Both the position numbers and the translations under genes were made by a program. The notes beneath the pieces were generated by a model. It worked only from the letters and a program-made list of their open reading frames with translations, was not told the origin of the DNA and ran no database searches. A stretch of DNA of 63,382 bases, the filler included, from Octopus bimaculoides (Eukaryota): NCBI RefSeq assembly GCF_001194135.2. It is 7 parts of 7 records of this genome, joined end to end, with 100 filler letters (N's around TTAATTAATTAA, not from the genome) between each part and the next. Parts side by side here need not be neighbours in the genome. Positions count along the whole stretch, not along the records: positions 18,911 to 26,980 come from NC_069004.1; 6 more parts are not named here. One strand, 5' to 3'. Below are positions 18,385 through 27,080 of the stretch, piece by piece. The first letter of the stretch is position 1; each line of letters begins with the position of its first letter.

Positions 18385-18963
18385 CATATACATATACATA
18401 TTTAAATACACACATATATATACACACATACATATACATATATACACATATATACACATATATACATACGCACATATAGTTTTTGTAGGACAATAGAGAG
18501 AATGAATGTCAACTGGGAAAGAGAAGATAATCACAACTATAATGTAATGACATGTTTATCATTTCTCACAGGACTATACTGGCGTGGAAGGAGAGACACA
18601 CAGACAGACAGACAGATAATTAAACACACACATGTATATGTGTGCGTGTGTGTGTGTGTGTGTGTAAATATATATACAGACAGAGAGGCAGAGAAAGAGA
18701 GAGGGAGTGTGTTAATGGGTAAATGCTAGGGGTATGACAAGGAGGGGCTTGAATAACTTCTGTAATTTTCTGCTGATTAAAAACTAAAAATAAATATATA
18801 TATATATATANNNNNNNNNNNNNNNNNNNNNNNNNNNNNNNNNNNNNNNNNNNNTTAATTAATTAANNNNNNNNNNNNNNNNNNNNNNNNNNNNNNNNNN
18901 NNNNNNNNNNAAAAAAAAGGTAGGAGAGTATTGTAGTTCACTTGAAGCATTGTGTATTGTTTG

Positions 18964-19219
18964 TAAAGAATAAAAAGTTTAGAATGGTACAACAATGCAC
19001 TATAGAACAAAAATGGACTATATACCTGTTGTAATTTGGTTATCTATAGTCTGATATTTCGGAATTACAATTCCTTCTCTGACTCCAGCAAAGAAGATCT
19101 GAAGAAGGAATTGTAATTCCGAAATATCATCAGACTATAGATAACCAACTTACAACAGGTATATAGTCCATTTTTGTTCTATAGTGCATTGTTATACCAT
19201 TCTAAACTTTTATTCTTTA
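18964..19219. repeat. Long inverted repeat (~115-bp arms, 24-nt spacer)
   Basis: 18964-19078 is the reverse complement of 19103-19219, with a few substitutions and small indels. Confidence 0.9.
19096..19131 (+). ncRNA. Minimal type I hammerhead ribozyme-like motif
   Basis: GAT-CTGAAGA-A-GGAAT(TGTA)ATTCC-GAAA-TA-T-C-ATC. The core is intact, stem II is a perfect 5 bp, stem III is the minimal palindrome ATAT, the triplet AUC ends at 19128 and stem I is only 3 bp. The opposite arm (19048-19084, -) holds a copy with a damaged core. Confidence 0.5.
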
Positions 19220-19694
19220 TAAAAAAAAAGAATATTCCCAGATTCATAATCTCTGTATTTTTATATGTGGAATAAAAAAAAGAACTAGAATAAAAGTTAA
19301 AAATTAAGGAATTGTGGGTGAGGGGATTAAAATTTTGAAAATGTGATTTTTGGGGCAAAATCGTATTTGATATTGAAAACATATTTTGGAATAAAAATAA
19401 AATTAAAAAATATCGGAAATNNNNNNNNNNNNNNNNNNNNNNNNNNNNNNNNNNNNNNNNNNNNNNNNNNNNNNNNNNNNNNNNNNNNNNNNNNNNNNNN
19501 NNNNNNNNNNNNNNNNNNNNNNNNNNNNNNNNNNNNNNNNNNNNNNNNNNNNNNNNNNNNNNNNNNNNNNNNNNNNNNNNNNNNNNNNNNNNNNNNNNNN
19601 NNNNNNNNNNNNNNNNNNNNNNNNNNNNNNNNNNNNNNNNNNNNNNNNNNNNNNNNNNNNNNNNNNNNNNNNNNNNNNNNNNNNNNNNNNNNNN

Positions 19695-20010
19695 GCTCGT
19701 GAAATTAACGTGCAAGTGGCTGACCACTCCACAGACACGTGTACCCTTAACGTAGTTCTCGGGGATATTCAACGTGACACAGTGTGACAAGGCTGGCTCT
19801 TTGAAATTCAGGCACAACAGAAACAGGAAGAAAGAGAGAGAAAGTTGTGGTGAAAGAGTACAGCAGGGTTCGCCACCATCCCCTGCCTGAGCCTCGTGGA
19901 GCTTTAGGTGTTTTCGCTCAATAAACACTCACAACGCCCGGTCTGGGAATCGAAACCGCGATCCTATGATCGCGAGTCCGCTGCCTTAACCACTGGGCCA
20001 TTGCGCCTCC
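19695..20010 (-). mobile_element. SINE family D (tRNA-derived head)
   Basis: Minus strand 5' end GGAGGCGCAATGGCCCAGTGGTTAAGGCAGCGG...GCGGTTTCGATTCCCAGACCG shows A and B boxes. The copy is truncated by a gap. Confidence 0.75.
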
Positions 20011-20727
20011 AGGCCTTAGGTACATACCCAAGTGAAAAGCAAATGCTGTCGGAAATGCTCAGTTTTGTCCACTTGATATTCTATTTTAATGATCTGAAAA
20101 TACACAAAAATCAATAAAATTAAGAAATCAAAACAATATCTTGTTGAGCAAAAAATTCTTTTTCAAATAACTTAAAATATTTTGTCAATGCATTTTTAAA
20201 TTTGAAAAAATTGTTCATGAATTATTCTTCAACTCTATATATATGTTTATGTATGCATGTATATATATATATATATGTTTTTATATTATTAATAAAATTA
20301 TTAACAATATTCACAAGAAATCAATATTCAAATTTCTGAAAGATATATGTTTAATATGACACAGTAATCATTTTGAATTATAATTAAATTAAAATTAAAG
20401 ATATACAAAATATAAATGTATATAAAAATATATGTGTACTTATAGATATACACACACACACATCATAGTTGCTGTACTGTGAGTCTGAATTAAAGCACTT
20501 GGTTGTGAAGGAGCTTTTTAACCATGCAACCATTTTCCTGTTTGAATTAAGTTGTTGAATTATGTATCCTCACCACTGAGCCAATCTTCTATTCATTCCC
20601 CACCCTTTTCACAATATTTATTAATTTTTGGTTATCTTTCAGATACCCAGAATATACAACCTTTTGAAAAATTCTATCATTTGCTGGTAGTGAGAATATA
20701 TCAGAGCAGACTAAAGAACAGAAAGAA

Positions 20728-21283
20728 ATGGGATCTAAGAAGAAGAAGAATCTCCTGCCATCGCAGAAAAACAAGGAAAATGATGTATGCAAAAGTAGAT
20801 CAAAGAAAAGTGCAATGAGCATGCCTGAGCAAGAGAACTTTTCAACAGGCATCCATAATATTTTGCCTAGTACATCAGGCACTGTACAGGCGTCTAAAAA
20901 ACGCACCAAGAAACTTCCCAATGTGAGCAATTCACAGCTGAAGCCATACGTTGATGACTCGACAGATGATGATGATGATGATGAAGAGATGATGACTCCA
21001 GAACACAAGACACGCCTGAATGACTCTTCTGCGGAGTTGGTGGAAAATATGATTCCTGACAATGTACTCATTTTTTTATTGGCAAAGAAAGTATTAACAA
21101 GCTATGAGGTGGACTTAGTTAAGAGTAAAGGAAGCCGTATGTCTATGAATGAAATGCTCATTTCTTTGGTGAGGTGCAAGTCAGATAAGGCATTTAGTGT
21201 ACTTGTAGAGACCCTGAAGAAAACTGAGCAAAAACATTTGGCCAAGTTACTGACATCTACTGAGAAACGAAAACGGAAACCAG
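20728..21283 (+). CDS. Coding exon 1 of a CARD + TRADD-N-like protein (Lys-rich N-terminus, poly-Asp tract, CARD at about 20995-21252)
   Basis: ATG at 20728, with an upstream in-frame stop at 20665-20667 and a polypyrimidine acceptor ending at 20642. The translation PEHKTRLNDSSAELVENMIPDNVLIFLLAKKVLTSYEVDLVKSKGSRMSMNEMLISLVRCKSDKAFSVLVETLKKTEQKHLAKLL matches the CARD death-fold pattern by eye. Donor CAG|GTAATT follows 21283 (phase 1). Confidence 0.85.
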
Positions 21284-21414
21284 GTAATTTCTTCACACAC
21301 AAATACAGACACGCTCTTTCTTTCATAAACACTCCACAACACTTTCTCTTACAAACATACACTCAGTCTTTCTTACACATGCACACGCACACACTGAGGC
21401 ATACATAGGTGTAC

Positions 21415-22135
21415 TGATAGGCATGGCTGTATGGTTAAGAATCTCACTTTCTACTTACATGGTTTCTGACTCAGTCCTGCTGTATGACACCTTGGTCAAG
21501 TGTCATTTACCATAGTTTGGGCTGACCAAATCCTTGTGAGTGAATTTGGTAGATGGAACCTGAAAGAGGCCACTTTATATGTATGTGTGTGTACTCATGC
21601 TATATATAAGGAAAAGAAAGGATGGAAAATGCATAGTTTCATAATTCCACAATTTTCAAAAATAGTTCATATTGGAAGGACCTGAGGCTATACTTGAGGT
21701 AAATGTGGCAGAGCTCCAGCTCCTTGCATTTCACACTACTATTGAAAATCAGGTAATTGTGAAACCGGTTAAGTAAATGCAAATAAATCTTGTTAAAGAC
21801 ACCAAGTTCATTTTCAATTTTTATCCTCTTTATACCTCCACTTGTAAAAAGAAAACCCTTATGTACACACATACACCCACATGAAAGACACACACACACA
21901 CACACACACACATATAAAGATGTATATCATCTTTTATATTTCCCTTGTTTCAGTCATTGTGGAATGCAGTTATTCTGGGGCACCACCTTAGTTAAAGAAA
22001 CTTAAACCAATACTTATTTTTTCTTCTGTTTAACCACTAAGTTAAGGGGATGTAAACAAACCAACACTAGATTGTCTAGTGGTAGCAAGGGGACAAATGC
22101 AAACACGCATTCATATGAATGGTTTGTTTCAGTGC
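21415..22135. mobile_element. Two partial SINE family A copies in intron 1 of the CARD gene (about 21415-21600 +, about 21935-22135 -)
   Basis: The family A head (GGCATGGCTGTATGGTTAAG) is on +, and the tail (CTTGTTTCAGTCATT...CACCACCTT) is on -. Confidence 0.65.
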
Positions 22136-22277
22136 TTATTGCTGGCGAGTGACCGTGTTGTGTGTGTGTGCTGTTTTTGTCCATTTTTCTGATATTTTGT
22201 GGTGGGAATACTATTAGCAAATATTTTAAAACTAAAAAAAAAAAAAACCAAAAGAGTCTGGTTTTTTTTTCTTGCAG

Positions 22278-22766
22278 GGGAGATAAGCGTGCGTGTTGAC
22301 ATTGAGAACACAACCAGTTCTGACTGTAAAGGAAAAGAAAAGCAAATGAACTTAGATGACGAGATGGATGAGATGTATGACGTAATTAGGTCATGGCTAT
22401 GCAAGATCAAACCGCAAGACAACTCTCGTGAAGCTTATAAGCAGTTTAAAAAACAATTTGACGGCACATACAAGCGTATTAAAAAGTGGCTTAAACTGTG
22501 TAAGTTAAGGAAAAAACTGTGCAGCAAAGGCCGGGTACTTACTGACATCACCAATGGAAGTATTCATCTCTGGTTCCATTGCTCTACAGTGAATGGTTTG
22601 TTAGATCTTTGGGAAATGTACACAAGTGGGAAGCTTCTCCACTTTCTCCAAGAGTCTCTTATCACACAAGACATAAAGCAGAAATTTCACCTGAAGATGG
22701 TGAAGCTAAAAGTGAGAATAATTAACGAAGAATTTCAACAATGTTATCAAGAATTATCTGGGCGAT
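22278..22766 (+). CDS. Coding exon 2: TRADD-N-like domain
   Basis: Acceptor TTTTTTTTTCTTGCAG ends at 22277. The phase-1 junction G|GG restores the frame (RKRKP-G-EISVRVD). The segment GSIHLWFHCSTVNGLLDLWEMYTSGKLLHFLQESLIT...LKVRIINEEFQQCYQEL fits the invertebrate TRADD-N-like motif GS(I/L)xLxxxCxSxxxLxxLWxxYxSGxL...EEFxxC as I recall it. Donor T|GTAAGT follows 22766 (phase 1). Confidence 0.8.
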
Positions 22767-23457
22767 GTAAGTTTGACCATGTTTTCTAATGCTCTGAAAC
22801 TTTTTTTACTTTATCGTGATGGCACCTGTGCCCAGCGTCACCTTTCTGGCACTTGTGCCAGCAGCATGTGTAAGGACCTTCGAGCGAGATCGTTGCCAGT
22901 GCCCCTGGACTGGCTCTTGTACGAGTGGCACATAAAATACACCATCTTGAGCGTGGCCGTTGCCAGTACCGCCTGACTGGCCTTCGTGCGAGTGACACGT
23001 AAAAGCACCCACTACACTCTCTGAGTGGTTGGCGTTAGGAAGGGCATCCAGCTGTAGAAACTCTGCNNNNNNNNNNNNNNNNNNNNNNNNNNNNNNNNNN
23101 NNNNNNNNNNNNNNNNNNNNNNNNNNNNNNNNNNNNNNNNNNNNNNNNNNNNNNNNNNNNNNNNNNNNNNNNNNNNNNNNNNNNNNNNNNNNNNNNNNNN
23201 NNNNNNNNNNNNNNNNNNNNNNNNNNNNNNNNNNNNNNNNNNNNNNNNNNNNNNNNNNNNNNNNNNNNNNNNNNNNNNNNNNNNNNNNNNNNNNNNNNNN
23301 NNNNNNNNNNNNNNNNNNNNNNNNNNNNNNNNNNNNNNNNNNNNNNNNNNNNNNNNNNNNNNNNNNNNNNNNNNNNNNNNNNNNNNNNNNNNNNNNNNNN
23401 NNNNNNNNNNNNNNNNNNNNNNNNNNNNNNNNNNNNNNNNNNNNNNNNNNNNNNNNN

Positions 23458-23497
<40 letters not shown>

Positions 23498-23689
23498 TAT
23501 GTGAGTATATGCATATATCCGTACATGTATGTACATACCTACATCTACCTGTATATATAGATGCAAAACGTAGACAAAATGATAAACAGAGTACAGAAAA
23601 CACACAGGCCACATAGAGAACATTTCCTTCATCAGCTGCCACCATTCTAACACTGGCGTTTCGAAGAGTTAGGGCAGATATATATATAT

Positions 23690-23935
23690 ATATATGGGGT
23701 TATCCTGTAAATAGTGCAGTCTTTTCAGTTGCATGAACTAAAAGTCAGAGGGGGACAGGATAATAAAAGCAGGTAGTAATTTTACCATGTACTTATTCTT
23801 AGTGCAAGTTTTGAAGAGTTCAGTTATTTTTTCAAAGCTATAATGGAAGTGACAAAGGAACATATTTGGCATATTTTGCTTTATGAATTCAATAAAGGCA
23901 ACGATGCAACAAAAAGTGAAAGAGTGAAGACCTTT
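23690..23935 (+). mobile_element. Mariner transposase N-terminal fragment
   Basis: EVTKEHIWHILLYEFNKGNDAT resembles the mariner HTH start. It is preceded by a TA-flanked candidate terminal sequence. Confidence 0.55.
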
Positions 23936-24728
23936 TTTAGCCAGTGTTTCTCCTTTATATATGCCCATATACGAATTCTAAACTTTCGTCAAAGAAATCT
24001 TTCATGAAATACGGTTCTTAGAATTCGGATATGAGCAGTTACAAAATCCCTGATTTTTGGGAAATTACTCGGTGATCGTTAGATGCCACTAAACTCCACG
24101 ACTCTCACAATAGTGATAGTTGGATGTTACTAAACTCCATGACGCTCACTCATTGAGATATTGGCTATTTTTTATGCCATGTCTATGATAAAAATCCAAC
24201 AAGACTTATTTAAATTGTTGTGAACTCTAGTAGTTAGTATGAAGGATTAGCTAGTGTGAATTTTAAGTCGTAATTCTCTACAAGAAAATTACTTTACTTT
24301 CCAATTCTACTATAAATGCTAAAGGTACATAAATAAAATAATCTAGTAATTATTTTCTCTTTCTTCACGTTCTTCAACTTGTTAATGAAATTTATTTCTG
24401 CAATTATAAAACTGTGTATTTTTTATAGCGGTTAAAAGAACACGAGTTTATTTATCTTCAACATACATGCACGCATAAAATATCCGTTAGCGTTTCAGAG
24501 TATATATTTCTCACTATAGCGTTTATGTAGCTGGAGTGAGGATTTATGTATAATGGTAACAATTATAAGTAAGTTATAAGTGACGTGCTTATCAATATGT
24601 ATTCCCACTTCAAAAGTAAAATATATTTCTTATCTCTTTCCAAATAGAAAACATATAAAAGTAGTCTTACACAAATAATAACCAAATGCAACTATAAAAA
24701 GTATAATGTGTTGTTTGTTTTGTTCCAG

Positions 24729-24775
24729 CATTTGAAGGAAACGAGGGTGTCACTGAGGAACAAAAGGCCATACAG
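24729..24775 (+). CDS. Probable coding exon 3 (47 nt; S-FEGNEGVTEEQKAIQ)
   Basis: Acceptor TTTGTTTTGTTCCAG, donor CAG|GTGAGC. It is phase-1 compatible with exon 2, open in that frame and ends in phase 0. It is a GC-richer island in AT-rich flanks. Confidence 0.55.
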
Positions 24776-24974
24776 GTGAGCGAGTGGATTTTGGTTTTTG
24801 AAACATTCCATATTTTATACTGAGATAGTAAACATTACATGTGTGTGTGTGCGTGCGTGCATGTATACTTACATACATAAAAGTGTGACTTTTGTAGATA
24901 CACGTATGCACACACACACACACTCACTCATATATGTATGTATATATGTACACACACACATATATTTATACATT

Positions 24975-26660
24975 TGGCATGGCTTCTACATCTGGATGCC
25001 CTTCCGAATACCAACTACTCTGAAAGTGTAATGGGTGCTTTTACGTGCCACCGGCACAGGTGCTATTTGTGTGACACCAGCATCTGCCACGACTGCAATT
25101 TTACTTGGCTTGATCAATCTTCTTCGAGCACAGCATAATGCCAAAGGTCTTGGTCACCGCTTCTGTGAGGTCCAACACTCGAAAGGAGCTTTTCACATGT
25201 CACCGGCATCAACCACTTTGTCTTCATGAGGCCCAATGTTTGAAAGATGCATTTTATTTGGTTCTGGCACAGGTGCCAGTTACGTGATACCAGCATCATC
25301 CACAACGATTTCACATGGCTTGACCGGTCTTCTCAAGCACAGCATATTGCCAAAGGTCTTGGTCACTAGTCATTGCCTTTGTGAGGCCCAAAGTTTGAAG
25401 ATCATGCTTCACCACCTCGTCATGTCTTCCTTGGTCTACCTCTAACACAGGTTCCGTTCACAGTTAGAGATTCGCACTTTACACAGCTGTCCTCATCCAT
25501 ACACATCACATGACCATACCAGCGCAGTCGTCTCTTCTGAACACCACATCTGATGCCTCATATGCCCAACTTCTCTCTCAAGATGTTTACACTCTGTCAA
25601 ACATGCACATTGTTCATCCAGTGAAGCCTACTGCCTTCATTTTTTTCAAGCCTACGCATGTCCTCGGCTGTCACAGCCCATGTTTCACTACCATGCAGCA
25701 TAGCTGTTCATACACAGGCATCATACAATCTACTTTTCACTCTGAGGGAGAGGCCCTTTGTTATCAGCAGAGGTAGGAACTCTCTGGACTTTGCCCAACC
25801 CATTCTTATTCTGACAGCTACGCTCTCGGAGCACCCACCTCTACTACTAACTTGGTCACCTAGATAACAGAAGCTATCAACTACCTCTAGCTTACCCTCC
25901 TGGCTATTGATGGAGTCTCTTTTCTGTACATTCTCAATGCATCTTCCACACAAAACACTATTCTCCCTGTTAACCTTCCTCTAATATAGCTGCACCTCTT
26001 ATTTCTTTCTTGCCCACAAGAGGCTAAACATAGAGGGGACAAACAAGGACAGACAAAGGGATTAAGTCGACTATATCGCCTCCAGTGTGTAACTGGTATT
26101 TATTTTATCGACCCCGAAAGGATGAAAGGCAAAGTAGTCCTCGGCGGAATTTGAACTCAAAACGTAGCGGCAGACGAAATACTGCTAAGCATTTTGCCCG
26201 GCGTGCTAACGTTTCTGCCAGCTCGCTGCCTCTTATGCACCTCTTATGCGGCCATAGCTTACACCGGATAAATCTTCTCTACAGATCAAGCAGGGCCATC
26301 TACCTGAAGGGAATTGTGATTTGTCTGCCTTCTTATTTACTAAGACCTTGGTTTTTGTTAGGTTAACTCTGTGGCCTTTCAATTCTAGACCTTGCTTCCA
26401 TACCTGAAACATCTTCTCCAGTTCTGATAGTGATTCAGCTACAAGAAAAAAGTCACCAGCATAGAGGAGCTCCTAGTGGCAGCCTGTCTGAAATTCTTCT
26501 GTTATTGCCTGGAGGACTATGATGAACAAGAAGGAGCTGATAACCGACCCTTAGTGGACCCCTAATTGTACCTTGAATTCATCACTATGTTCATTGCTGA
26601 TCTTCATCCTACTGACAGCATCCCTGTACATGGTTTGTACAGCTCTCACCAGCCTCTCAT
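24975..26660 (-). mobile_element. RTE-clade LINE 3' fragment (RT core to 3' tail), interrupted by a SINE
   Basis: Minus translations give ELLYAGDFFLVAESLSELEK (YADD-equivalent, about 26430-26470) and LEVVDSFCYLGDQVSSRGGCSESVAVRIRMGWAKSREFLPLL...KSRLYDACV. Confidence 0.85.
26002..26230 (-). mobile_element. SINE family B (tRNA-headed), inserted into an RTE LINE fragment
   Basis: Minus strand reads GGCAGCGAGCTGGCAGAAACGTTAGCACGCCGGGCAAAATGC...GAGTTCAAATTCCGCCGAGG...GCCTTTCATCCTTTCGGGGTCGATAAA. Confidence 0.8.
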
Positions 26661-27080
26661 CTAACCCTATGTTTATAAAAAAAAAAATAATTTTTTGAAA
26701 ATTCATGAATTTTTCAAACATCCCCTCCCCCCACTCAGTACCAATTTCAGTCTTTCTTTTTTTTTTTGCACTATGCACTTAAAATGATGGGAGATGCATT
26801 AGGGGCCAAAAAAGAAAAAAATCAGCAATCACCATTACAATCCCCACTTCCTTTATTTTCAAATTGAAAATGAAATGTAATTTAAAAACAATAGTGAAAT
26901 TTAACCAGACATTTTTTATTTAACATACCCCTGCCTCATAAATCCTAAAATTTCAGCTTCTTTTCAAAATTTGCTTTAATNNNNNNNNNNNNNNNNNNNN
27001 NNNNNNNNNNNNNNNNNNNNNNNNTTAATTAATTAANNNNNNNNNNNNNNNNNNNNNNNNNNNNNNNNNNNNNNNNNNNN

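What the first reader, a model, noticed from the sequence alone, without database searches (positions are those of the whole stretch)
20728..24775. Gene encoding an unusual CARD + TRADD-N-like adaptor architecture
Seen: two phase-matched exons join a CARD to a second conserved globular domain, and a probable third exon follows. Knowledge: vertebrate TRADD pairs TRADD-N with a C-terminal death domain and recruits TRAFs, and TRADD-N-like domains are expanded in several invertebrate lineages next to death-fold domains. Inference: this is a cephalopod innate-immunity or apoptosis adaptor with an N-terminal CARD in place of the death domain. I do not recognise it as a named gene. The six-frame track shows the halves as two separate ORFs.
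Basis: partly seen in the sequence, partly recalled or inferred. Interest (0 to 1): 0.75.

Follow-up and report, generated by a model that had tools for sequence, protein, structure and literature searches.

The report
Octopus CARD plus DEDD2-type TRADD-N gene
This is a real Octopus bimaculoides gene (LOC106877111) joining a caspase-recruitment domain to a TRADD-N-type domain, but the architecture is shared across molluscs and brachiopods and this gene was already listed in a 2021 domain survey, so it is a correct but ordinary find whose function is still untested.

Summary
Exons 20728-21283, 22278-22766 and 24729-24775 have canonical splice sites and are in phase. Their product is 100% identical to the first 364 residues of the 391-aa protein annotated for Octopus bimaculoides LOC106877111. 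Pfam finds CARD (55.5 bits) and TRADD-like_N (30.7 bits), both above their cut-offs. The assembly gap at 23067-23457 lies inside intron 2, so no coding frame crosses it. Octopus orthologues join exon 2 to exon 3 with no extra residues.

The interpretation needs correcting. The second domain belongs to the DEDD2 clade of TRADD-N domains, not the classical TRADD clade. The domain order (death-fold first, TRADD-N second, with a conserved KRKRK basic patch between) is that of DEDD/DEDD2, with CARD in place of DED.

The architecture is not unusual. Kaur et al. 2021 (eLife) list it for oysters, scallop, limpet, snails, Aplysia and Lingula. They also list this very gene, as KOF75889.1 and XP_014781391.1.

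No functional work exists. The most likely role is a CARD-recruited, probably nuclear, cell-death or immunity adaptor. The gene's 3' end lies outside the piece and is uncertain, and the gene may continue into further CARD units.

The parts
20728..21283 (+). Coding exon 1 (556 nt, from the ATG, ends in phase 1). It encodes a basic, Ser-rich and acidic leader, then the CARD, then the KRKRK patch.
   Evidence: ORF and donor CAG|gtaatt. 100% identical to P0001 residues 1-185.
21013..21258 (+). CARD (protein residues 96-177).
   Evidence: Pfam PF00619, 55.5 bits against a cut-off of 23.9. A profile of this CARD and its relatives hits CED-3 (1.3e-10) and the Apaf-1, caspase-9, BCL10 and CARD8 CARDs (about 1e-7) in the PDB.
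21265..21279 (+). KRKRK basic patch (residues 180-184), just before the exon 1/2 junction. Predicted to be a nuclear localisation signal.
   Evidence: A run of K/R followed by G-E-[IL]-x-[IV]-x-[VL]-D is kept in the 13 CARD + TRADD-N relatives compared. The NLS function is inferred from the pattern only.
21284..22277 (+). Intron 1 (994 nt).
   Evidence: gtaatt...cttgcag. tblastn matches of the mollusc relatives break at this junction.
22278..22766 (+). Coding exon 2 (489 nt = 163 codons, phase 1 at both ends). It encodes the whole TRADD-N domain of the DEDD2 clade.
   Evidence: Splice sites. 159 relatives at E<=1e-3, many aligning over the whole exon product. The domain profile has 137 positions and matches protein residues 212-348.
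22499..22666 (+). Core matched by Pfam TRADD-like_N (residues 260-315: strand 2, turn, strand 3, helix 2).
   Evidence: PF20694, 30.7 bits against a cut-off of 23.7. 100 of the 150 relatives match the same family.
22556..22561 (+). Gly279-Ser280, the 'uS' motif of the TRADD-N superfamily, in the turn between strands 2 and 3.
   Evidence: Nearly invariant (G93, S94 of the exon product) in the 71-sequence alignment A3. It sits between strands 85-91 and 95-101 of the model. Motif definition from Kaur et al..
22767..24728 (+). Intron 2 (1962 nt as assembled), containing the assembly gap and transposon debris.
   Evidence: gtaagt...ttccag.
23067..23457 (.). Assembly gap (391 N) inside intron 2. It is not coding.
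   Evidence: Exons 2 and 3 are joined directly in the Octopus proteins.
23855..23920 (+). Fragment of a mariner (Mos1-type) transposase HTH domain inside intron 2.
   Evidence: Pfam HTH_48, 26.4 bits against a cut-off of 24.1.
24729..24775 (+). Coding exon 3 (47 nt, phase 1 to 0), encoding (S)FEGNEGVTEEQKAIQ.
   Evidence: Splice sites. Present in P0001 and in the O. sinensis and O. vulgaris proteins. A 44-nt homologue follows the next CARD exon (L001 28047-28090).
24776..26980 (+). Start of intron 3, running to the edge of the piece. The last annotated coding exon lies outside the piece, at L001 18845-18928.
   Evidence: The minus-strand ORFs here (25708-26778) have no Pfam match.

Best explanation
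**What is shown.** The finding is the 5' three-quarters of LOC106877111 of Octopus bimaculoides. It is a real, spliced, protein-coding gene. Its product has these parts, in order:
- a disordered basic and acidic leader;
- a CARD;
- a conserved KRKRK basic patch;
- a roughly 137-residue TRADD-N domain of the DEDD2 clade, encoded entirely by exon 2.

It is the octopus member of a CARD + TRADD-N family found across molluscs and in the brachiopod Lingula.

**What is inferred.**
- The protein works as an adaptor of the DEDD/DEDD2 type.
- The CARD docks it by homotypic CARD-CARD contact onto a CARD-bearing partner. The CARD profile is closest to the CED-3, Apaf-1, caspase-9 and BCL10 CARDs.
- The basic patch probably sends the complex to the nucleus, as the localisation signals of DEDD do (the DEDD comparison is from general knowledge).
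- Exon 2 has the same phase at both ends and is skipped in an O. sinensis isoform model. Cells may therefore choose between a CARD-only form and a CARD + TRADD-N form.

**Confidence.** The identity and architecture are near certain (about 0.95). The score of 0.55 below is for the adaptor mechanism.
For: **Gene structure and identity:**

**Domains:** Pfam CARD and TRADD-like_N both score above their curated cut-offs. The CARD profile matches solved CARDs at 1e-10 to 1e-7.

**Family.**
- There are 159 relatives of the exon 2 product at E<=1e-3. 100 of the 150 listed match PF20694 and 14 carry a CARD.
- The named members are molluscan: Octopus vulgaris, Patella, Littorina, Bulinus, Solemya, Sinanodonta and Potamilus.
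- The KRKRK-G-E-[IL]-x-[IV]-x-[VL]-D linker is kept in the 13 CARD + TRADD-N relatives compared.

**Fold.**
- The AlphaFold2 model built with the 71-sequence alignment has mean pLDDT 86.6 and pTM 0.74.
- Its element order is strand-helix-strand-strand-helix-strand, plus a C-terminal helix. That is the order expected for the RRM-like fold Kaur et al. describe for TRADD-N.
- The nearly invariant Gly-Ser sits in the turn between strands 2 and 3.

**Clade.** The family profile scores DEDD/DEDD2 orthologue cores at 30-38 bits and TRADD at 3-7 bits. Kaur et al. list KOF75889.1 (391 aa, CARD+TRADDN-DEDD2) and XP_014781391.1 (LOC106877111, CARD+TRADDN-DEDD2+CARD).

**Exon skipping.**
- O. sinensis isoform X9 and the LOC115224053 model read ...RKRKP|AFEGNKD, which is exon 1 joined directly to exon 3.
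- The O. bimaculoides sequence predicts the same outcome at the split codon: G+CA gives Ala when exon 2 is skipped, and T+CA gives Ser when it is included.
Against: - No experiment exists on any member of the family. No RNA-seq could be consulted, so the splice junctions rest on annotated models and on conservation.
- Foldseek against the PDB did not retrieve TRADD-N. All hits had E>0.4, and many of them were ferredoxin/RRM-like folds.
- A sequence profile of the domain also found nothing in the PDB. The link to TRADD-N therefore rests on the Pfam model, the motif, the predicted order of elements and the published transitive searches.
- The octopus protein lacks the N-terminal coiled coil seen in other mollusc members, and no such exon was found in the locus.
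- Its TRADD-N domain is only about 30-42% identical to the non-octopus members, so its function may have drifted.
- The NLS and the partner classes are pattern-based guesses.
Confidence: 0.55

Rival explanations
1. The protein is a TRADD-like, receptor-proximal cytoplasmic adaptor. Its TRADD-N domain would recruit a TRAF through the TRAF's MATH domain, and its CARD would replace the death domain as the link to upstream receptors or downstream caspases.
For: The domain belongs to the TRADD-N superfamily. It keeps the Gly-Ser turn, whose serine in TRADD contacts TRAF2 (citing Park et al. 2000).
Against: - The family profile gives classical TRADD only 3-7 bits, against 30-38 bits for DEDD/DEDD2 cores.
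- PF09034 is not among the Pfam families reported.
- The domain order is the reverse of TRADD's.
- A conserved basic, NLS-like patch sits between the two domains.
- There is no death domain.
Confidence: 0.15
2. The 391-aa product is a truncated model. The true main product would continue past exon 4 into one or more further CARD units (CARD - TRADD-N - CARD - CARD). It would then act as a multivalent CARD scaffold or filament nucleator rather than a simple two-domain adaptor. This concerns the extent of the gene and is compatible with the adaptor reading.
For: - The stop codon of the 391-aa model lies inside a consensus donor, GAAGT|GTAAGT.
- The next CARD exon (L001 26415-26960) is open at its 5' end into an N gap. 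It is followed by a 44-nt homologue of exon 3.
- O. sinensis isoform models, the O. vulgaris 650-aa protein and the older RefSeq model XP_014781391.1 (587 aa, CARD+TRADDN-DEDD2+CARD) all join these units.
Against: - The current NCBI model and the original GenBank model both stop at 391 aa.
- About 7.5 kb, 5.3 kb of it N, separates exon 4 from the next CARD exon. That stretch also holds a Pif1/Helitron-like fragment.
- Read-through models of tandem paralogues are a common annotation artefact.
Confidence: 0.45
3. The two halves are unrelated ORFs joined by chance or by annotation, or the locus is a decaying pseudogene in a transposon-rich region.
For: The surroundings are full of repeats, transposon fragments and assembly gaps. 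Kaur et al. note that DEDD2-clade TRADD-N genes are often associated with retrotransposons.
Against: - Both exons are open with canonical, phase-matched splice sites.
- The same junction sequence, KRKRKPG|E[IL]x[IV]xVD, is kept in three Octopus species and in other mollusc relatives.
- Both domains score above the Pfam cut-offs.
Confidence: 0.03

Closest known systems
CARD + TRADD-N (DEDD2 clade) proteins of molluscs and brachiopods, as tabulated by Kaur, Iyer, Burroughs and Aravind 2021 (eLife 10:e70394, Figure 4-source data 1)
   Same: Same architecture, and this gene is in the table (KOF75889.1, 391 aa; XP_014781391.1, LOC106877111). Shared features are the CARD, the KRKRK-G-E-[IL]-x-[IV]-x-[VL]-D linker, the roughly 137-residue domain with the Gly-Ser turn, and the C-terminal R-x-x-[FL]-x-E-[IVM] motif.
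   Different: The octopus protein lacks the N-terminal coiled coil of the Aplysia, Patella and Solemya-type members. Its TRADD-N domain is divergent, about 30-42% identical to the non-octopus members. It also sits at the head of a tandem array of CARD units.
DEDD / DEDD2 (FLAME-3), vertebrate nucleolar death-effector-domain proteins
   Same: Same order of parts: death-fold domain, then basic NLS-like patch, then a C-terminal TRADD-N of the same clade. The family profile scores DEDD/DEDD2 orthologue cores at 30-38 bits. The clade assignment is by Kaur et al..
   Different: The N-terminal domain is a CARD, not a DED, and no DED match was found. No DED-bearing protein appears in the Pfam tally of the 150 closest relatives, of which the first 25 of 37 families are shown. 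It is therefore not a DEDD2 orthologue. Partners are expected to be CARD proteins rather than caspase-8/10 or cFLIP.
TRADD (vertebrate TNFR1-associated death domain protein)
   Same: Same domain superfamily (TRADD-N, RRM-like fold) paired with a death-fold domain. The small-residue-plus-Ser turn is conserved.
   Different: The domain order is reversed and a CARD replaces the death domain. PF09034 is not among the Pfam hits, and the family profile gives TRADD only 3-7 bits. According to Kaur et al., classical TRADD is confined to vertebrates.
CRADD/RAIDD and other two-domain death-fold adaptors
   Same: A small adaptor with an N-terminal CARD and a second protein-binding domain. The RAIDD CARD is matched by the CARD profile at 1.4e-4.
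   Different: The second domain here is a TRADD-N, not a death domain.

Membership tests
CARD (Pfam PF00619, death-fold superfamily) | Sequence match to the CARD profile above the curated cut-off | tested here: met
   55.5 bits against 23.9, residues 96-177. The profile of this CARD and its relatives hits the CED-3, Apaf-1, caspase-9, BCL10 and CARD8 CARDs at 1e-10 to 1e-7.
CARD (Pfam PF00619, death-fold superfamily) | Six-helix bundle fold and homotypic CARD-CARD binding | not tested
   No structure was predicted for exon 1's product. Binding needs an experiment.
TRADD-N superfamily (as defined by Kaur et al. 2021) | Match to the TRADD-like_N profile (PF20694) above the curated cut-off | tested here: met
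   30.7 bits against 23.7. 100 of the 150 relatives also match, best E=2.9e-13.
TRADD-N superfamily (as defined by Kaur et al. 2021) | Conserved 'uS' motif (tiny residue plus Ser) in the turn between strands 2 and 3 | tested here: met
   Gly279-Ser280 is nearly invariant in alignment A3. It lies between strands 85-91 and 95-101 of the model. Definition.
TRADD-N superfamily (as defined by Kaur et al. 2021) | RRM-like two-layer alpha+beta sandwich with a four-stranded antiparallel sheet | tested here: inconclusive
   The model (pLDDT 86.6) has the element order strand-helix-strand-strand-helix-strand. Foldseek against the PDB gave only weak hits (E>0.4), many to ferredoxin/RRM-like folds, and did not retrieve TRADD. 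The first, shallower model was poor.
DEDD2 clade of TRADD-N domains | Closer in sequence to DEDD/DEDD2 cores than to classical TRADD | tested here: met
   The family profile scores 30-38 bits on DEDD/DEDD2 orthologue cores and 3-7 bits on TRADD. The published table labels this protein TRADDN-DEDD2. The NCOA6 clade was not scored here.
DEDD/DEDD2 orthologue | N-terminal death effector domain (DED) | tested here: not met
   Pfam finds CARD and no DED.
Classical TRADD | N-terminal TRADD_N (PF09034) plus a C-terminal death domain | tested here: not met
   Neither PF09034 nor a Death domain appears in the Pfam results at E<=10. The domain order is reversed.
Classical TRADD | Binding of the TRAF2 MATH domain by the TRADD-N sheet | not testable with these tools
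   Needs a binding assay with octopus TRAFs.

The most novel reading that the evidence does not exclude
The CARD - basic patch - TRADD-N(DEDD2 clade) - R-x-x-F-x-E-I family of molluscs and brachiopods is the CARD-based counterpart of DEDD. It would be a nuclear adaptor that carries CARD caspases or CARD scaffolds to nuclear targets. In octopus, its activity would be switched by including or skipping the single TRADD-N exon, within a gene that strings several CARD units together. The conserved C-terminal motif, which looks D-box-like by eye, would tie its stability to the cell cycle. None of this has been described experimentally.
Probability: 0.2. Interest if true: 0.5.

Novelty: already known. 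Interest (0 to 1): 0.22.

Why it matters
The finding shows that the first-stage reader can recover exact exon boundaries and a correct two-domain architecture from raw sequence. Biologically it adds little. The gene is annotated, and its architecture has been tabulated for this exact locus since 2021.

What remains open is the function of a CARD + TRADD-N family that is conserved across molluscs. Open points:
- which CARD partner it binds;
- whether it is nuclear, like DEDD;
- what the Gly-Ser face and the conserved C-terminal motif bind;
- whether exon skipping makes CARD-only decoys.

Cephalopods have few TRADD-N genes according to the published survey. That could make this single gene a cleaner entry point than the large oyster or coral expansions.

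Tried and rejected
1. **Word-indexed search with the exon 2 protein alone** found nothing, not even the protein itself.
2. **The same search with the 71-sequence profile** returned only 58 unnamed short proteins, with no named DEDD. They resemble the coral (Stylophora) TRADD-N copies in Kaur's alignment. They were useful only as alignment rows.
3. **First AlphaFold2 run** on that shallow, one-sided alignment gave pLDDT 61 and meaningless Foldseek hits. It was superseded by the run with the mollusc relatives.
4. **Foldseek of the good model against the PDB** did not retrieve TRADD. A sequence profile against the PDB did not either. The structural link to TRADD stays indirect.
5. **Look-up of the O. 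sinensis locus** failed because the protein is not on record, so intron 2 could not be compared across species to fill the gap.
6. **Search for an upstream coiled-coil exon** like that of other mollusc members found none in the 28.9-kb locus.
The clade test is therefore DEDD2 against TRADD only, plus the published label.
8. **Minus-strand ORFs at 25708-26778** looked like a LINE reverse-transcriptase tail by eye, but have no Pfam match. They are left unclassified.
9. **Pseudogene or chance-ORF reading** was rejected on conservation.


Full report
**1. The observation**

The piece (window 18911-26980) is Octopus bimaculoides chromosome record CM046624.1 of assembly GCA_001194135.2. Locus L001 maps onto it with L001 coordinate = window coordinate - 10727.

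- Exon 1, 20728-21283: from the ATG to CAG|gtaatt.
- Exon 2, 22278-22766: from cttgcag| to GAT|gtaagt.
- Exon 3, 24729-24775: from ttccag| to CAG|gtgagc.

Their lengths are 556, 489 and 47 nt, so the reading phase is kept. The joined frame is open for 364 codons.

Pfam reports CARD (55.5 bits, cut-off 23.9, residues 96-177). It also reports TRADD-like_N PF20694 (30.7 bits, cut-off 23.7, residues 260-315).

The spliced product is 100% identical to P0001, the 391-aa protein annotated for LOC106877111. That model has a fourth coding exon (PPVSAKVEKRIPRQNMPPKGRKALKEV). It lies outside the piece at L001 18845-18928, beyond a 2339-N gap.

**2. The assembly gap**

The gap at 23067-23457 lies inside intron 2 (22767-24728). 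No coding frame crosses it, and the 'ORFs' that do so are runs of X.

The exons on either side are joined directly, in the same order and with no extra residues, in the Octopus proteins:
- QELSGR|SFEGNEG in O. bimaculoides;
- QELSGQ|SFEGNKD in O. sinensis isoform X8;
- QELSGQ|SFEENKD in O. vulgaris.

The left flank of the gap is a dispersed repeat, 85% identical to an inverted copy at 24984-25057. The right flank is an (AT)n run. The gap therefore does not affect the finding. A small alternative exon hidden inside it cannot be excluded.

**3. What the second domain is**

An exhaustive phmmer search with the exon 2 product found 159 relatives at E<=1e-3. Many align over the whole exon product, not just the 56 residues that Pfam matches. 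A profile built from them has 137 positions and matches protein residues 212-348. Of the 150 listed, 100 match PF20694 and 14 also carry a CARD.

In the 71-sequence alignment A3, Gly93, Ser94, Trp111, Gly117 and Leu119 of the exon product are nearly invariant.

AlphaFold2 with that alignment gives a confident model (mean pLDDT 86.6, pTM 0.74). The order of its elements is:
- strand 2-8;
- helices 25-42 and 50-80;
- strand 85-91;
- strand 95-101;
- helices 104-135, broken in two places;
- strand 143-147;
- helix 149-161.

That is the strand-helix-strand-strand-helix-strand order expected for the RRM-like fold that Kaur et al. describe for TRADD-N. The Gly-Ser sits in the turn between strands 2 and 3, where they place the conserved 'uS' motif.

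Foldseek against the PDB returned only weak hits (E>0.4). Many of them were ferredoxin/RRM-like folds, such as adenylyl cyclase catalytic domains, IS608 TnpA and a dimeric ferredoxin-like protein. TRADD itself was not retrieved. A sequence profile against the PDB also found nothing. Membership of the superfamily therefore rests on the Pfam match, the motif and the predicted order of elements. A direct structural match is lacking.

**4. Which clade**

Core sequences were taken from the published TRADD-N alignment. The family profile scores DEDD/DEDD2 orthologue cores from oyster, Capitella, a pufferfish, coelacanth and Limulus at 30-38 bits. It scores classical TRADD from human, Xenopus and a ray at 3-7 bits. 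Pfam TRADD_N (PF09034) is not among the families reported.

The domain order here matches DEDD/DEDD2 and is the reverse of TRADD. A death-fold domain comes first, a basic patch follows, and the TRADD-N is C-terminal. The right comparison is 'DEDD2 with a CARD in place of the DED', not 'TRADD with a CARD in place of the death domain'. It is not a DEDD2 orthologue, because there is no DED.

**5. It is already catalogued**

Kaur, Iyer, Burroughs and Aravind 2021 (eLife 10:e70394, PMC8195603) give an architecture table in Figure 4-source data 1. It lists both models of this gene under clade TRADDN-DEDD2:
- KOF75889.1, CARD+TRADDN-DEDD2, 391 aa, OCBIM_22034109mg, Octopus bimaculoides;
- XP_014781391.1, CARD+TRADDN-DEDD2+CARD, 587 aa, LOC106877111.

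The string 'CARD+TRADDN-DEDD2' occurs 49 times in the held part of that table, which was cut when stored. The rows read include:
- Crassostrea gigas and C. virginica;
- Lottia;
- Mizuhopecten;
- Pomacea;
- Biomphalaria;
- Aplysia, with a coiled coil;
- Lingula.

My own search adds Octopus vulgaris, Patella, Littorina, Bulinus and Solemya as CARD-bearing members. Several of these are mislabelled 'kinesin-related protein 4'. It also adds Sinanodonta and Potamilus as TRADD-N proteins without a detected CARD.

The paper's main text says that cephalopods have 'very few (e.g., DEDD2) or no TRADD-N domains'. This gene is one of the four counted for the species. I found no functional study of any member.

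**6. Features that bear on mechanism**

*The CARD.* The CARD profile is closest to the CARDs of CED-3 (1.3e-10), MDA5, Apaf-1, CARD8, caspase-9 and BCL10 (about 1e-8 to 1e-7).

*The linker.* Between the CARD and the TRADD-N, every CARD-bearing relative compared keeps a run of K/R followed by G-E-[IL]-x-[IV]-x-[VL]-D. In octopus the exon 1/2 junction falls inside it (KRKRKPG|EISVRVD). The basic run has the form of a classical monopartite nuclear localisation signal. From general knowledge, DEDD carries such signals and is nucleolar.

*Exon 2 as a cassette.*
- It is 489 nt with phase 1 at both ends.
- O. sinensis isoform X9 and the LOC115224053 model join exon 1 directly to exon 3 (RKRKP|AFEGNKD).
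- The O. bimaculoides sequence predicts the same Ala (skipped) or Ser (included) at the split codon.
- Inclusion of the TRADD-N domain may therefore be regulated. This rests on predicted isoform models only.

*A C-terminal motif.* A short motif, P-[RK]-[RKQ]-[AV]-F-x-E-[IM], recurs downstream of the domain. It is present in 12 of 48 relatives that have a tail of at least 40 residues, against 0.03 expected after shuffling. The octopus exon 4 sequence GRKALKEV fits it.

**7. Extent of the gene**

The stop codon of the 391-aa model lies inside a consensus donor, GAAGT|GTAAGT. About 7.5 kb downstream, 5.3 kb of it N, there is a second CARD exon at L001 26415-26960. Its frame is open into an N gap at its 5' end. 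It ends AAACAAG|gtaatt in the same phase as exon 1, and a 44-nt homologue of exon 3 follows it.

O. sinensis models, the O. vulgaris 650-aa protein and the older RefSeq model all join these units. The locus is thus a tandem array of [leader + CARD exon, short exon] units, and only the first unit carries the TRADD-N exon. Whether the array is one gene or several cannot be decided without transcripts.

**8. Verdict**

The proper reference is DEDD2, not TRADD. The architecture is common in molluscs and already published for this locus. The likely function is a CARD-recruited, probably nuclear, adaptor in cell death or immunity, and this remains inference. Novelty: already known. Interest: low.

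Noticed in passing
L001 18905-18925 (octopus exon 4, outside the piece) and relatives P0008, P0009, P0012, P0018, P0020, P0024, P0025, P0026, P0029, P0038, P0051: A conserved short motif, P-[RK]-[RKQ]-[AV]-F-x-E-[IM], recurs downstream of the TRADD-N domain. It is in 12 of 48 relatives with tails of 40 residues or more, against 0.03 expected after shuffling. It occurs both in CARD + TRADD-N proteins and in TRADD-N proteins of about 900-1150 aa (the one looked up, P0012, is from the bivalve Potamilus). Octopus GRKALKEV fits. By eye it resembles an APC/C D-box (RxxLxx[IV]); this is untested.
   Followed up: partly
L001 18923-18930 (outside the piece): The stop codon of the annotated 391-aa protein sits inside a consensus splice donor (GAAGT|GTAAGT), so the model may be cut short.
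   Followed up: partly
L001 26415-26960 and 28047-28090 (outside the piece): A second CARD exon, 42% identical in protein to exon 1, is open into an N gap at its 5' end and ends in the same phase. A 44-nt homologue of exon 3 follows it. It is annotated as a separate 191-aa gene but is joined to this gene in the O. sinensis and O. vulgaris models and in the older RefSeq model.
   Followed up: partly
window 23855-23920 (+), inside intron 2: Fragment of a mariner/Mos1-type transposase HTH domain (Pfam HTH_48, 26.4 bits against a cut-off of 24.1).
   Followed up: yes
window 25708-26778 (-), intron 3: Several minus-strand ORFs of 51-81 aa look by eye like the tail of a LINE reverse transcriptase, but none has a Pfam match at E<=10.
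   Followed up: partly
window 22986-23059 and 24984-25057: Inverted copies (85% identical) of a short dispersed repeat. One copy abuts the assembly gap.
   Followed up: partly
L001 24604-24990 and 28440-28790 (outside the piece): A Pif1 2B-domain fragment (62 bits, Helitron-like) lies between exon 4 and the next CARD exon. A C2H2 zinc-finger ORF lies further downstream.
   Followed up: partly
P0005 (Octopus vulgaris), P0018/P0207/P0208 (Patella vulgata): Public records name these CARD + TRADD-N proteins 'kinesin-related protein 4(-like)'. No kinesin motor family appears among the Pfam families tallied for the 150 relatives (first 25 of 37 shown), so the name looks like a propagated misannotation, perhaps from the coiled coil.
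   Followed up: partly
window 19421-19694: A second assembly gap (274 N) lies about 1 kb upstream of the start codon, so a 5' non-coding exon or the promoter may be incomplete.
   Followed up: no
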